DNA of 64,000 nucleotides. Source: Gracilinanus agilis (Eukaryota). Location of the stretch: NCBI RefSeq assembly GCF_016433145.1, contig NC_058132.1, positions 203,993,543 to 204,057,542 of the forward strand, given 5' to 3'. The notes under the pieces are model-generated. The model was given only the letters and a program-made list of their open reading frames with translations, ran no database searches and was not told where the DNA came from. A program made the translations under genes and the position numbers. Shown piece after piece: positions 13,501 through 63,141 of the stretch (positions are counted from its first letter, which is position 1; every line of letters starts with the position of its first letter).

Positions 13501-18545
<5,045 letters not shown>

Positions 18546-39728: not shown

Positions 39729-40625
39729 GATAAGTTAGAAGCATTTCCAATAAGATCAGGAGTGAAACAAGGATGCCCATTATCATCTCTATTACTTAAC
39801 ATTGTACTAGAAACAATAGTGGTAGCAATTAGAGAAGAAAAATAAATTGAAGGTATTAAAATAGGCAATGAGGAGACTAAGCTATCACTCTTTGCAGATG
39901 ATATGATGGTCTACTTAAAAAATCCTAGAGAATCAACTAAAAAGCTAGTAGAAATAATCAACAACTTTAGCAAAGTTGCAGGATACAAAATAAATGCACA
40001 TAAATCATCAGCATTTCTATATATTTCCAACACATCACAGCAGCAAAAGGTTGAAAGAGAAACACCATTTAAAATCACCCTAGACAATATAAAATACTTA
40101 GGAATCTATCTACCAAAACAAACACAGGAATTATATGAACACAACTTCAAAACATTTTCCACACAATTAAAACTATATCTAAACAATTGGAAAAACATTG
40201 ATTGCTCATGGGTAGGACGAACTAACATAATAAAAATGACCATTCTACTCAAATTATTTAGTGCCATACCTATCAAACTATCAAAAAACTTTTTTACTAA
40301 ATTAGAAAAAAACATTGTACTAGAAACAAAGTTCATTTGGAAGAAAAAAAGATCAAGAATATCAAGGGAAATAATGAAAAAAAAAGTGAAGGAGGGTGGC
40401 CTAGCAGTACCAGATATTAAGATATACCATAAAGCAGCAGTCATTAAAACAATATGGTACTGGCTAAGAGACAGAAGGGATGATCAGTGGAATAGACTTG
40501 GGGTAAGTGACATCAGCAAGACAGTGACTAAACCCAAAGAGCCCAACTTTTGGGATAAAAATCCACTATTTGACAAAAACTGCTGGGAAAATTGGAAAAC
40601 AATATGGGAGAGATTAGGTTTAAAT

Positions 40626-40817
40626 CAGTGATTCCCAAAGTGGGCACTACTGCCCCCGGTGGGTGCTGCAGCAATCCAGGGAGGTGGTGATGGCCACACT
40701 TTTTTTGTATTACATTCTATTCTGAGTTCAATAAATAGTTTCATAATTTCTAGGGGGCACTAAGTAATATTTTTTCTAGAAAGAGGGCCATAAGCCAAAA
40801 AAGTTTGGGAACCACTG
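40626..40817 (+). mobile_element. Charlie-type hAT MITE (family C) in L1 ORF2
   Basis: TIRs CAGTGATTCCCAAAG / AGTTTGGGAACCACTG. TSD GTTTAAAT / GTTTAGAT. Confidence 0.9.
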
Positions 40818-57469: not shown

Positions 57470-57475
57470 TTTATT
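57470..57475 (-). terminator. HYOU1 polyadenylation signal AATAAA
   Basis: TTTATT on the + strand, about 1.5 kb past the stop codon and just before repeat-derived sequence begins. Confidence 0.7.
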
Positions 57476-58844: not shown

Positions 58845-58913
58845 AGCCTCCCCCCCACCAAGAAGAAAAAAGGGAACGGGGGGCTGCTCCTTCATTCTCC
58901 TCCTCAGGGACCC
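58845..58913. repeat. 69-bp inverted repeat arm A (HYOU1 3'UTR)
   Basis: Reverse complement of 62180-62248 at 66 of 69 positions. Confidence 0.95.
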
Positions 58914-58999
58914 TTGGGGGGAAGACCCATCCCCTTCCCCCCAAAAGACAATAAATAGGGGTGTTTGGGAGGAAGGGGATGACTAGGGAGGGGGCACAG

Positions 59000-61269
59000 C
59001 TAGAGTTCGTCATTTGACCGGGTTTCCCGTGGCCTTGGCGGTGGCTGCTCCTGCTCTGAATCTGTGGAAGGAAGGAAGGAATGCATGCATGAGGCAAGGG
59101 ACCAGGGCATCTCCTCTCCGCACAGACATGGGCCTGGCTGATGCTCCCATCCCTCCACCCACCGAGACACATCCTTAGCTCGAGGCTCACCTGACCCTGG
59201 ACCACTCAGCTCCAAAGGCTCGGCATCTCCTAGATCAAGCCCTACAGTAGGGAGAGACAGGATCTGACACCAGCTCAGAGGAGAGAGAAGCCAAGCTCTA
59301 GACCCAGTTCCCCTGACCCAGCTCACCTAAGTCAGGAATCTTGGCCTTCTCCCCAGCAGCAGGTGGCTCCGGAATGGGCTCAGAATCGTCCTCTAGGGGG
59401 TAACAGGGAAGAGCAAGAAATGAGTGGGAAGGGCTAGGTAATGGGGGGGGGGGTGTTAAATGACTTCTCCAGGGTCATACAGCTAGGAAGGAGACAAACC
59501 CCCCCCAACACATACACACATACAAAGGACCATGGGGGATGGCCAAGCATCTCTCACCCAATGGTGGAATGACTTTCTCCTCCTGGGCACCAGCACTACG
59601 ATTTTGTGCAGAGTCAGTCTGGTTCTTGTTCTGGTCACGGGGACGAGGCCGGGGTTTGGCAAACTTCGCCTTATTGAGCAGGTACTGAACCTCCCGGTCC
59701 AAAGCCAACATCTTAGCCTCAATGTCCTTTGAAAGCAGAATTGGTTTCTCCGTAGCAGAGAGTTTGGCTTGTTCTGCCAGGGTGGCATTCTTCCAAGCCT
59801 GGGGATTGGGGATAGGGCTCTGTGAGCACACAGCCTGGTGCCAAACCTACCTATCCACTCACCTCACACAGGGTGGCTGCCTCTCTGATTTCACTGTTAC
59901 CAAGGGGGCTGACAGGCTAAGTAGCCCTGGGCAAAGGTTACCGAATAACATGCATCAAAGAAGAGTTTGGAGGGCAGCTGGTGGCTCAGTGGATAGAGAG
60001 TCAGGTCTAGAGAGGGAAGTCCTAGGTTCAAATCCGGCCTCAGACACTTCCTAGCTGTGTGACACTGGGCAAGTCACTTAACCTCCATTGCAGTGATGGG
60101 CAACCATCTTGATATGTCAAAATTTGCCAAAAAACTGAGCATAACTCAGGTGGTGTTTCACTTTGAAAAAAAAAAACATAATTTCACAATATTTATTGTT
60201 TAAGGGTTTGTGGGAAGACAAGTCTGGAACCAAGGTCTTCTAGATTCTGAAATTAGCACTCCCTCTACTAAACCATGCTGCCTTTTTCTCAACTTTAACT
60301 AGGTTTGTTTTTTATTAACTTTTTTTTCATCCTGGAGAATAGAAACTTTCTGATTTTATATTTGTACCCCTAGCGCCTAGCTCAATAACCAGCACAGAGG
60401 AGATACTTAATATATGCTTAGTGGACTAAAGTGAACTTTCATTGTATCATCTCCCTGAACAAATCTTTAAGAAGTTCCTGCTGATTAGTGGACTCTCTTC
60501 CCCTCTGCAGCTGTCCCCAACCCCAACAAAAAGGGGAAAAAAAAAAAAAAAAAAGAAAAAAAAACCTTCCAAACACCTGCTTTCCTTAACCCTTTCATCT
60601 CCTTCCCCTACTTCACCAAATTATTGAGTTGATTCTCCATGGCTGGTCCTCAGGCCCATCCCTATCTAGGAGGAGGGGGAGAGAAAGAGGGAGGAGAGAA
60701 GAGAAGGGGGGGAGGGAGACAGAGAGAGAAAAAGAGAGACAGAGAGAGGGGGAGAGGGAAAGAGAAGAGGAGGAGGAAGAGGGAGAAAGAGAACACCTCC
60801 CACATCCAACTGCATTTTTTGCCCTCCTTTGACCTTGTAGCTCATGCTATCCATTTAATCACTCTTCTAGAAAAGCTTCTCCTAAGTATGATAAATGTCA
60901 ACATGAAATTTCATAATAACTTTTAAACTTCTGCATTTGGATTTGAAGGGTCTGATGTACAAACATGGGGTAGATAGGACTGTCGAAGTTGAGTGACTAT
61001 AAATTCCATTTGATTTAATGGCCAAATAGCTCATGGTATCTTTTTTTTAAACCCTTAACTTCTGTCTTACAACTGCTACTAAGTATTGGTTCCAAGGCAG
61101 AAGATGGGTAAGGGCTAACTAGGCAAGAGGGGTTAGGTGACTTGCCCTGGGTCATACAGCTGGGAGTCAGGGGAGCTGGGTCTGAATTTAGGCTCTGTTC
61201 TTTACTACTTTACTTCTTTACACCACCTTTATGTAGGCAAAGGCTTTTCTAGGCATTCATCTCCTCAGC

Positions 61270-61319
<50 letters not shown>

Positions 61320-63141
61320 CTTCCTACTGAAAGGTGCCTTCTAAAAGAGCCCCAATTTCTGTAACCCTACAAAATACAGGATATGAAGTTTGAGCTCCCC
61401 CTCTGCATCTTACTAGTTTGTGTGACCTTTGACAAATCACATAACTTTCACTGTAAAATGGAAAAGAAAATGACTGTCAACTTCTGAATCACTGAGTTGA
61501 TTCTCCATGGCTGGTCCCTGATCTCTCTGGAAGCAGCCACCCTAGTCCTCGACCATGGTCAGTGATGAGTCCACCTGGGTTAATTACCCAGGTCTCATTG
61601 ATGACTTTTTCCAGTGTGCTCAGTTCCACCTCTGTGAAAATCTGGTCCATCTCTGGGATAAGTCGAGCACCCCTGGAAGGGAAATAGCAGCTCATCAGCC
61701 CAGAAGGGAGAAGACAGGAATACAGTGCAAAGACAACAGGGAGAGACTCTCGGAATCCTGCCCCTCCTCTCTCCTCCTCTACAAAATGATCTCTCACCCC
61801 CTTAGGGAATGCTGGGGTCTGGGAGGTGAGGGTTGGAGGAAGGCAGGAGAGGATGGGTCAGAGCCAGGAACACAAAACCCTTTGTCTCTTACTTGAGGAA
61901 GATGTTTGAATGGTTGAGGAGGCTGTCCAGGGCAGCCAACCGCTCAGGCCACTTCTTCCGCTCTTCCACACGGAAAAAAAGTCCCCGGCACAGCTTCTTC
62001 AGCTCAGCCAACTTCTCCTTTAGCTCCTGATGGATGGGGCAGAGAGGAACAATGACCTTGGGAGTCGCCGCCCCATGCTTCTGAGAATTCCCCTCTACAA
62101 TCCTCCAAACCACCACTGTGCTGCTTTATGGGGAGGGCTGGGGGGTGGAAGGGATCCAAACCAGCTACTTCCCCGCCATGGGTCCCTGAGGAAGAGAATG
62201 AAAGAGCAGCCCCCCATTCCCTTTTTTCTTCTTGGTGGGGGGGAGGCTACCCTACCTTGGTGCTGGCACCAAAGCCTTCATCCTCTAACCAGTTAGAGGC
62301 TGCACTAAGCTTCACAGAGATCTCCTCTCGCTCCTCCTCTGTGGAGACCTCCTGATACTCTGGCTGGTAGAGCTTGTCCTGGGGACACAGAAGACACCTG
62401 GGCTAAGGACTGAGCTGAGCCGACCACCCATTCTGGCCAATGGGACAGCAGACAAGAAAGGGCATTCTGCACATCCACACTACTGACCTGGGTTTCAAAA
62501 ATAAAGGCCTCCAGACTGTTGGCTGCCTTCTCCCTTTCCTGCTTTTCTAAGTCCCGAAGTGTCAGCTCCTGAAGCCTGGGGTAGGGGTGGGGATGGAAAA
62601 GGCCTGTGTCAGCTGTGGAAGGACCTAGGGTCAGATGCCCCCCACCCCCAGCCCCAGCCCAGACTCTCACTTGTGCAGAGATCGTGCCAGCTCCTCCTCT
62701 GGGAGGTCTGGAAGGTCAAGCACAGAAAGTTCAACTCCAATTTCCTCCACCATCTTCTGCTTCCGGGCCACCTTTGGCTTCTTTTCCTCCTCAGGGGCCT
62801 GCGCTCTGCCCTCCTGCCCTTGCTCCCTTTGGTCACTGGTTTCCTGGGAATTGGAAGGTGACATTAAAAACCCTGGCCCATACCCAAGCAGCCAGAATGG
62901 ATCCACCCTAGATTCCAGACCCCCGGGGGACCTTAATTCTACCCTTCAAGCTCACCTGGGCCTCAGCCTTTTCCGCATCTCCCTTCTCTGATGCAGCCTC
63001 TCCCTCAGGGGCTGTGCCATCGACCGGCTCAGGGCTTGGGGGCTGAGAATCCCCTTCACCAGGAACCTTGCCTTCCTCTTTGGGCTCTGCCTGCTCTCCA
63101 GGTTCCTCCTTGCTCCCCTCAGCTGGGGTCTCCTCTTCTTC
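59000..63141 (-). CDS. HYOU1: Hypoxia up-regulated protein 1 (GRP170/ORP150), last 10 coding exons; 5' part lies outside the window
   Basis: Exons 62956-63141, 62671-62843, 62488-62575, 62256-62378, 61893-62026, 61588-61672, 59558-59798, 59327-59392, 59191-59241, 59000-59061 (1209 nt, in frame). Includes EKAANSLEAFIFETQ, DREVQYLLNKAK and the C-terminal NDEL ER-retention signal. Confidence 0.97.
59968..60200 (+). mobile_element. SINE1 with a truncated, reversed hAT1-like MITE (from 60091)
   Basis: SINE up to aacctccattg, then CAGTGATGGGCAACC...gagcataactc, the reverse complement of the family B 3' end. Confidence 0.75.
60668..60795. repeat. GA-rich low-complexity tract
   Basis: Directly visible. 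Confidence 0.85.
61040..61190 (-). mobile_element. SINE1-type SINE in a HYOU1 intron
   Basis: Reversed tail and core. Confidence 0.75.
61273..61315. repeat. A43 homopolymer
   Basis: Directly visible. Confidence 0.95.
62180..62248. repeat. 69-bp inverted repeat arm B (HYOU1 intron, starting at donor +8)
   Basis: Reverse complement of 58845-58913. Confidence 0.95.

What the first reader, a model, noticed from the sequence alone, without database searches (positions are those of the whole stretch)
58845..62248. 69-bp long-range inverted repeat pairing a HYOU1 intron with the HYOU1 3'UTR
Seen: 62180-62248 is the reverse complement of 58845-58913 at 66 of 69 bases, and neither arm resembles the transposons in this window. 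One arm begins at +8 of the 229-nt intron after exon 62256-62378; the other lies 86 nt past the stop codon. All three differences (58877, 58890, 58900) become G-U wobbles in the sense pre-mRNA, so the duplex is uninterrupted; with three transitions this has about a 1-in-8 chance. The loop would hold five internal exons plus the NDEL exon. Inference: a long-range RNA duplex that could control intron retention, exon skipping, ADAR editing or nuclear retention of an ER-stress chaperone mRNA, or else a recent templated inverted duplication.
Basis: partly seen in the sequence, partly recalled or inferred. Interest (0 to 1): 0.8.

Follow-up and report, generated by a model that had tools for sequence, protein, structure and literature searches.

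The report
Opossum HYOU1 intron–3'UTR inverted duplication
An 80-base piece of the HYOU1 chaperone gene of a small opossum is present twice in opposite orientations, once at the start of an intron and once just after the stop codon; it could form a very stable RNA duplex, but nothing found here suggests it is more than a young, lineage-specific DNA duplication.

Summary
The arms 58845-58921 and 62172-62248 are reverse complements at 72/77 bases ungapped, 66/69 in the core, and 80/81 nt with one indel. There is no third copy in the 64-kb window and no similarity to its transposons.

The three core differences do become G-U pairs in the sense RNA, giving a 69-bp unbroken helix (about -163 kcal/mol).

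The exons match Gracilinanus agilis HYOU1 at every residue that differs from Monodelphis.

I found no evidence of function or conservation:
- Two bats and a turtle show no intron-3'UTR complementarity above shuffled controls (z -1.0, +0.35, -0.27, against -7.5 in the window).
- No run of related organisms holds any sampled 31-mer of the intron arm.
- The small, probably RNA, runs of the same organism do not hold it either.
- The G-U argument is weak (1 in 8 at best). One site is a CpG, and the known transcription-linked mutation bias favours exactly these changes.

Best reading: a lineage-restricted inverted micro-duplication, roughly 9-26 Myr old if neutral, whose RNA duplex is possible but unproven. 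Didelphid orthologous DNA and read-level RNA data could not be obtained.

The parts
62168..62248 (-). Upstream (5') arm in the sense pre-mRNA. It covers intron positions +8 to +88 of the 229-nt intron 62027-62255. It also contains a strong 3' splice-site-like tract (pyrimidine run followed by CAG|G) about 73 nt from the donor.
58845..58924 (-). Downstream (3') arm, 75-154 nt after the stop codon, in the presumed 3'UTR. It is the reverse complement of the intron arm (80/81 nt with one indel; 69-nt core 66/69).
62256..62378 (-). HYOU1 coding exon (DKLYQ...GASTK) whose donor, AAG|GTAGGGT, lies 7 nt upstream of the intron arm.
62027..62255 (-). The 229-nt intron that carries the upstream arm. If retained, the reading frame hits a stop at the third intron codon (GTA GGG TAG).
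59000..59063 (-). Coding part of the last exon (…RETRSNDEL) with stop codon TAG at 59000-59002.
59192..62026 (-). Loop content: five internal exons (61892-62026, 61588-61672, 59556-59798, 59325-59394, about 59192-59238) and their introns.
57470..57475 (-). First canonical AATAAA on the sense strand after the stop codon (1.53 kb downstream). This is the likely poly(A) signal and places the downstream arm inside the 3'UTR (inferred).

Best explanation
An ~80-bp segment of HYOU1 was copied in reverse-complement orientation 3.25 kb away within the same gene, in the lineage leading to this didelphid opossum (Gracilinanus agilis or a near-identical species). The likely cause is a replication or repair error such as template switching or a templated insertion at a break. 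Since then the two copies have drifted apart by three transitions, one transversion and one 1-nt indel.

One copy sits at +8 of a short intron and the other in the 3'UTR. A 69-bp duplex can therefore exist only in transcripts that still carry that intron once the 3'UTR has been transcribed; the spliced mRNA has one arm only.

Shown: the repeat, its single-pair status in the window, its anatomy, its stability, and its absence from two eutherians and a turtle.

Inferred: the DNA mechanism, neutrality, the age, and which copy is the original.
For: 1. There are exactly two copies in 64 kb and no similarity to the window's transposons. The arm is absent from viral and JGI metagenome contig collections.
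2. Divergence looks like ordinary decay: 3 transitions, 1 transversion and 1 indel in 80/81 nt. The last two break pairing at one edge. K2P is about 0.052 (my calculation from those counts), or 9-26 Myr at 1-3e-9 per site per year.
3. One of the three G-U sites is CpG in the UTR copy and TpG in the intron copy. Sense-strand A>G excess is documented for mammalian transcribed regions (PMC2927911). Sense-strand A>G or C>T in a stem always yields G-U.
4. Intron-3'UTR duplex energy against 200 dinucleotide shuffles: window z=-7.5 (0/200), Saccopteryx z=-1.0, Glossophaga z=+0.35, Emys z=-0.27. The repeat finder finds no intron-UTR pair in the bat locus.
5. Only run X1 of the window's own organism holds the 5 sampled 31-mers of the intron arm. 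Relatives B, C and D, which hold 8-10% of the words of the 3.7-kb stretch, hold none. Organism E, from the same study as X1, also holds none.
6. Runs X2-X4 of the same organism are small contig sets that hold 29-42% of the 3.7-kb stretch, so they are probably RNA. They hold none of the intron-arm words.
7. The 5% divergence between the arms, and full k-mer support in X1, argue against an assembly artefact.
8. Template switching is a documented source of new inverted repeats and RNA hairpins (PMC5453318; PMC8794818).
Against: No orthologous DNA from another didelphid could be read. Lineage restriction within marsupials, and the ancestral state, are therefore untested.

Genome-wide copy number was not measured.

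All three core differences are pairing-compatible on the sense strand, and the 69-bp helix is uninterrupted. Selection for pairing would produce exactly this. The intron lies only about 3 kb from the gene's end, so some transcripts may well still carry it when the 3'UTR emerges.

Described short template switches act over tens to hundreds of bases, not 3 kb.
Confidence: 0.6

Rival explanations
1. A functional long-range pre-mRNA duplex. Pairing of intron +8..+88 with the 3'UTR delays or blocks removal of this intron. The transcript then has a premature stop three codons into the intron, becomes an ADAR substrate, or is kept in the nucleus. This would tune output of an ER-stress chaperone in this lineage.
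For: The helix has 69 uninterrupted pairs at -162.8 kcal/mol, against -23.7 and -32.0 for each arm folded alone. All three core differences are G-U on the sense strand only. The helix starts 2 nt beyond the U1/U6 contact region of the donor. The intron is near the 3' end of the gene, where splicing often finishes after transcription (established knowledge). Long-range complementary pairs are known to affect splicing, editing and 3'-end processing (PMC8052449).
Against: There is no intron-3'UTR complementarity in two bats or a turtle. No 31-mer of the arm is found in related organisms. The intron arm is absent from the probable RNA runs of the same organism. The edge transversion and indel are not compensated. 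The G-U pattern has p of about 1/8 or weaker and a mutational explanation. Each arm folds locally into its own hairpin, and local folds are unremarkable (z -0.3 and -1.1). The downstream arm is in the terminal exon, so looping cannot promote exon skipping or circularisation.
Confidence: 0.17
2. Two independent insertions, or remnants, of an unrecognised low-copy repeat family specific to this lineage that happen to lie in opposite orientation in the same gene.
For: The window is full of inverted pairs made by dispersed repeats: 165 pairs of at least 45 nt. Genome-wide copy number could not be measured with the tools available.
Against: No third copy, even diverged, exists in 64 kb. The sequence has no terminal repeats, poly(A) tail or target-site duplication. 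Related organisms, including organism E from the same study, hold none of its sampled words. Two copies 3 kb apart in one gene is what a local duplication predicts.
Confidence: 0.12
3. An assembly artefact, in which a chimeric or fold-back read was incorporated into the assembly.
For: Fold-back artefacts do occur in long-read assemblies. X1 may be the same sample the assembly came from, so it is not independent support.
Against: The copies differ at five positions, whereas an artefact would be identical. X1 contigs hold all 5 sampled words across 62165-62262, including the exon junction, and 91% of the 3.7-kb stretch. Both arms sit in otherwise ordinary, collinear gene sequence.
Confidence: 0.03

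Closest known systems
Pairs of conserved complementary regions (PCCRs) and other functional long-range pre-mRNA structures (Kalmykova et al. 2021, PMC8052449; ATE1, BRD2/3, Dscam1 examples)
   Same: Two complementary segments kilobases apart in one pre-mRNA, one next to a splice site. The predicted energy is far beyond the -30 kcal/mol class in which ADAR editing is strongly enriched.
   Different: PCCRs are defined by conservation and compensatory change. Here complementarity is absent in the outgroups tested and no covariation is available. PCCRs are typically 10-30 bp and intronic on both sides. HYOU1 is not mentioned in that paper's main text.
Inverted Alu/SINE pairs in 3'UTRs (IRAlus) that cause ADAR editing and paraspeckle-linked nuclear retention (PMC4378195)
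   Same: A long, near-perfect intramolecular dsRNA involving the 3'UTR.
   Different: In IRAlus both arms are in the mature 3'UTR and derive from transposons. Here one arm is intronic and is lost on splicing, and neither arm is transposon-like.
Template-switch mutations that create inverted repeats and hairpins (Löytynoja & Goldman 2017, PMC5453318; Mönttinen & Löytynoja 2022, PMC8794818)
   Same: A reverse-complement copy of nearby sequence appears de novo and creates a potential RNA stem without any selection.
   Different: Described events copy 10-100 nt over tens to hundreds of bases within one replication fork. Here the copy lies 3.25 kb away, closer to FoSTeS/MMBIR-type or templated-insertion events. 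The ancestral state could not be examined.
Flanking intronic inverted repeats that drive back-splicing (circRNA biogenesis)
   Same: Inverted repeats bracketing a block of exons.
   Different: The downstream arm is in the terminal exon, with no donor site beyond it, so back-splicing of the looped exons is not possible.

Membership tests
Conserved long-range pre-mRNA structure (PCCR-type) | Two complementary regions within the same pre-mRNA that form a stable duplex | tested here: met
   69 uninterrupted pairs at -162.8 kcal/mol. Duplex energy z=-7.5 against 200 shuffles.
Conserved long-range pre-mRNA structure (PCCR-type) | Both regions and their complementarity conserved across species, ideally with compensatory substitutions | tested here: not met
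   Two bats and a turtle show no complementarity above shuffles. The arms have no significant homology to bat or turtle intron or UTR. No arm 31-mers are found in related organisms. Close didelphid relatives could not be aligned.
Conserved long-range pre-mRNA structure (PCCR-type) | A measurable effect on splicing, editing or 3'-end processing | not testable with these tools
The only indirect hint is that the intron arm is absent from the probable RNA runs.
IRAlu-type 3'UTR inverted repeats | Both arms lie in the mature mRNA 3'UTR | tested here: not met
   The upstream arm is intronic, +8 to +88 of intron 62027-62255.
IRAlu-type 3'UTR inverted repeats | Arms are copies of a dispersed SINE | tested here: not met
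   No other copy in 64 kb, and no match to the window's repeat families.
circRNA-promoting intronic inverted repeats | Arms lie in the introns on both sides of the circularised exons | tested here: not met
   The downstream arm lies after the stop codon in the last exon.
Template-switch / templated inverted duplication | A reverse-complement copy of a nearby sequence with sharp ends | tested here: met
   80/81-nt homology that ends abruptly on both sides.
Template-switch / templated inverted duplication | An outgroup or ancestor has only one of the two copies | tested here: inconclusive
   Bats and turtle have neither recognisable copy, being too distant. Didelphid DNA was unobtainable. Relatives' runs lack the arm's sampled words, which is compatible with absence or with divergence.
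Template-switch / templated inverted duplication | Source and copy lie close together (same fork), with microhomology at the junctions | tested here: inconclusive
   The distance is 3250 nt, larger than for described short events. There is only a 2-nt AG ambiguity at the junctions.
Transposon / MITE | Multiple dispersed copies, terminal repeats, target-site duplication | tested here: not met
   Two copies only in the window and no TSD or TIR. The genome-wide count was not available.

The most novel reading that the evidence does not exclude
In this opossum lineage a newly arisen 69-bp intron-3'UTR helix acts as a splicing timer for HYOU1. Transcripts in which the 3'UTR is made before the intron is removed become locked as dsRNA. 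They are then hyper-edited, retained, or degraded through the premature stop three codons into the intron. Chaperone output would then depend on the race between splicing and elongation, for example under ER stress or hypoxia. This would be a lineage-specific regulatory element born in a single mutational step.
Probability: 0.1. Interest if true: 0.6.

Novelty: new member of a known kind. Interest (0 to 1): 0.3.

Why it matters
If it is neutral, this is a clean natural example of one DNA copying error creating a very long potential dsRNA inside an essential, highly expressed gene. It also shows that such a helix can be tolerated when one arm is intronic. As a caution, it shows that 'all differences are G-U' is weak evidence for selection inside transcribed genes, because the known strand-biased mutation spectrum produces the same pattern. 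If it were functional, it would be a rare case of a species-specific long-range splicing or editing element with a datable origin. Nothing found here supports that.

Tried and rejected
There are therefore no read-level data on retention, editing or relatives.

2. Retrieving marsupial orthologues.
- The exon-ORF search found only eutherian and bird ORFs.
- The full-length owl query listed only sauropsids.
- I then simulated MAFFT/HMMER locally. This produced an alignment (A5: a long annelid HYOU1 as first row, plus window exons) whose profile ranks marsupials first.
- That search returned Gracilinanus agilis HYOU1, whose cluster also holds Monodelphis.

3. Exact look-ups of ORFs that span each arm, and of shorter isoforms, found nothing on record.

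4. By eye the bat intron and 3'UTR seemed to resemble both arms. Shuffle tests showed this is within chance (p 0.1-0.9), so I dropped any claim about which arm is ancestral.

5. My first '84 nt, 79/84' extension was wrong. The ungapped extension fails, and the correct figure is 80/81 with one indel.

6. Rfam found nothing at the arms. There are only weak sub-threshold miRNA-like hits nearby.

7. Earlier scan notes hold nothing on this locus.

8. Papers that mention both HYOU1 and intron retention gave nothing relevant.
Full report
**Observation**

The repeat finder reports arms 58845-58921 and 62172-62248: 77 nt, 94% complementary, 3250 nt apart. The three differences are at 58877/62216, 58890/62203 and 58900/62193, and there are two further mismatches at 58914 and 58918. 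Gapped blastn extends the homology to 58845-58924 versus 62168-62248 (80/81 nt, 93.8%, one 1-nt indel). An ungapped 84-nt extension that I first assumed is wrong.

Each half of the arm occurs only twice in the window at up to three mismatches, with none expected in 100 shuffles. A word-7 blastn of each arm plus 60-nt flanks finds no diverged third copy. The window holds 165 other inverted pairs of at least 45 nt, made by dispersed repeats. This pair belongs to none of those families.

**Gene anatomy**

HYOU1 runs on the minus strand.
- Exon 62256-62378 ends AAG|GTAGGGT.
- The 229-nt intron 62027-62255 follows, and the arm starts at +8.
- The stop codon is at 59000-59002 after ...NDEL.

Alignment to full-length opossum proteins revealed a small exon I had missed, at about 59192-59238. 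No AATAAA or ATTAAA occurs on the sense strand until 57475-57470, 1.53 kb after the stop. The downstream arm is thus very probably 3'UTR, but this is inferred.

Retention of the intron would give a stop at its third codon.

**RNA duplex**

In the sense RNA the three core differences are U-G wobbles, so 69 pairs are uninterrupted. They are followed by a mismatch, three pairs, a one-base bulge and seven pairs. The cofold energy for the 77-nt arms is -162.8 kcal/mol, against -153.8 for the antisense strand. Each arm folded alone gives -23.7 and -32.0 kcal/mol. Local folding of the intron and of the 3'UTR start is unremarkable (z -0.29 and -1.07). It places each arm in a hairpin of its own.

**Source organism**

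Through a profile built from a long annelid HYOU1 plus the window's exon translations, the protein search returned HYOU1 of Gracilinanus agilis as top hit. Its 90% cluster also holds Monodelphis domestica. The window's exons agree with G. agilis at every residue where it differs from Monodelphis. The window therefore comes from this didelphid or a near-identical one (taxonomy).

**Conservation**

Orthologous DNA of Monodelphis and Gracilinanus could not be read because the files are too large. Two kinds of evidence remained.

The first is k-mers. In the 3.7-kb stretch, the window's own organism holds 91% of sampled words in run X1 and 29-42% in three small runs. Organisms B, C and D hold 8-10%, about the same in their DNA and RNA runs, so these words are essentially exonic. 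For 62165-62262 (five sampled words), only X1 holds any. Organisms B, C and D hold none, organism E from the same study holds none, and the small runs of the same organism hold none. Exon-like conservation of the intron arm in those relatives is therefore unlikely. The intron arm is also not assembled in what are probably RNA runs. Five words is a small sample, and Logan contigs drop rare variants.

The second is outgroup loci. I fetched HYOU1 from two bats (L002 Saccopteryx leptura, L003 Glossophaga mutica) and a turtle (L001 Emys orbicularis). The orthologous intron is 158, 170 and 436 nt long. Best intron-3'UTR duplex energy against 200 dinucleotide shuffles gives z=-7.5 for the window (0 of 200 as good), but -1.0, +0.35 and -0.27 for the three outgroups. 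The repeat finder shows no intron-UTR pair in the bat.

By eye both arms seemed to resemble bat sequence at the orthologous places. Local alignment scores are within the shuffle distribution in every combination (p 0.1-0.9). No statement can be made about which arm is ancestral. The repeat is therefore not an old feature of HYOU1. How far it extends within marsupials is unknown.

**The G-U argument**

Three transitions all falling on the pairing-compatible side has probability 1/8 under symmetry, or 1/4 for either strand. The true null is weaker still, for three reasons.
- In mammalian transcribed regions A>G exceeds T>C on the non-template strand, giving G+T excess (PMC2927911). Any sense-strand A>G or C>T in a stem produces G-U rather than a mismatch.
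- Site 58877 is CpG in the UTR copy and TpG in the intron copy, which is the commonest mammalian substitution.
- The transversion at 58914 and the indel are not compensated.

Three transitions, one transversion and one indel in 80 nt is what neutral decay looks like. K2P is about 0.052 (my calculation), or roughly 9-26 Myr at 1-3e-9 per site per year if there has been no gene conversion.

**Mechanism**

The best-supported account is a DNA-level inverted micro-duplication within the gene. Template switching is a documented way to create new inverted repeats and RNA stems without selection (PMC5453318; PMC8794818). The 3.25-kb distance exceeds that of the described short events, however, and the junctions show only a 2-nt ambiguity.

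The RNA duplex can form only in molecules that keep the intron until the 3'UTR is transcribed. The downstream arm lies in the terminal exon, so looping cannot promote exon skipping or back-splicing. The only plausible RNA-level effects are delayed intron removal, ADAR editing, or retention of unspliced molecules. These resemble what is described for long-range complementary pairs (PMC8052449) and for 3'UTR inverted Alus (PMC4378195). The element fails the defining features of both families: it shows no conservation, and both arms are neither in the mature UTR nor SINE-derived.

An assembly artefact is unlikely, because the copies differ at five positions and X1 holds all sampled words. A lineage-specific repeat family cannot be excluded without a whole-genome search.

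**Verdict**

This is a real, striking-looking but probably neutral, lineage-restricted inverted duplication. I put about 0.6 on that reading, 0.17 on a functional duplex, 0.12 on an unrecognised repeat family and 0.03 on an artefact. The decisive data are didelphid orthologues, genome-wide copy number and RNA reads from this species.

Noticed in passing
window 62575-62669 (minus strand): The 95-nt HYOU1 intron between exons 62670-62843 and 62488-62574 folds end to end into a G-rich/C-rich hairpin (-50.8 kcal/mol, z -1.8). It gives weak, far sub-threshold Rfam hits to the mirtron families mir-1224 and mir-1227 (27 bits against gathering scores of 105 and 70). Mirtron-like, unproven.
   Followed up: partly
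window 58949-58958 (minus strand sense CTATTTATTG); L002 about 18343-18352; L003 and L001 at the same place after the stop: An AU-rich motif about 45-55 nt after the HYOU1 stop codon is identical or nearly so in the opossum, two bats and a turtle. It is a conserved 3'UTR element, ARE-like. On the plus strand it reads AATAAA.
   Followed up: partly
window 58928-58981: A local imperfect palindrome (54 nt, 74% self-complementary) lies directly upstream of the 3'UTR arm in the sense RNA. It gives weak miRNA-like Rfam hits on both strands (about 23 bits against gathering scores of 77-79).
   Followed up: no
window 62183-62205 (minus strand): The intron arm contains a strong 3' splice-site look-alike (a pyrimidine tract ending CAG|G) about 73 nt from the donor. 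The same motif lies antisense in the 3'UTR copy. Using it would extend the next exon and hit a stop within seven codons.
   Followed up: no
P0387 (UniRef A0A5F8G1T5, Monodelphis) vs window 59478-59556: A Monodelphis HYOU1 isoform reads through the donor after the exon corresponding to 59556-59798 into intron-encoded residues. An annotated retained-intron form therefore exists for a different intron of the loop, not the one carrying the arm.
   Followed up: no
window 39903-40631 (plus strand): A 242-aa ATG ORF that looks like a LINE reverse-transcriptase fragment lies in the ~28-kb gap between SLC37A4 (first coding exon near 28.8-29.3 kb, minus strand) and HYOU1.
   Followed up: no
window 60619-60649 and 61487-61517: A 31-nt direct repeat (94%) lies inside the 1.8-kb HYOU1 intron, next to poly(A) runs and MIR-like SINE pieces. 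These are probably two copies of a SINE.
   Followed up: no
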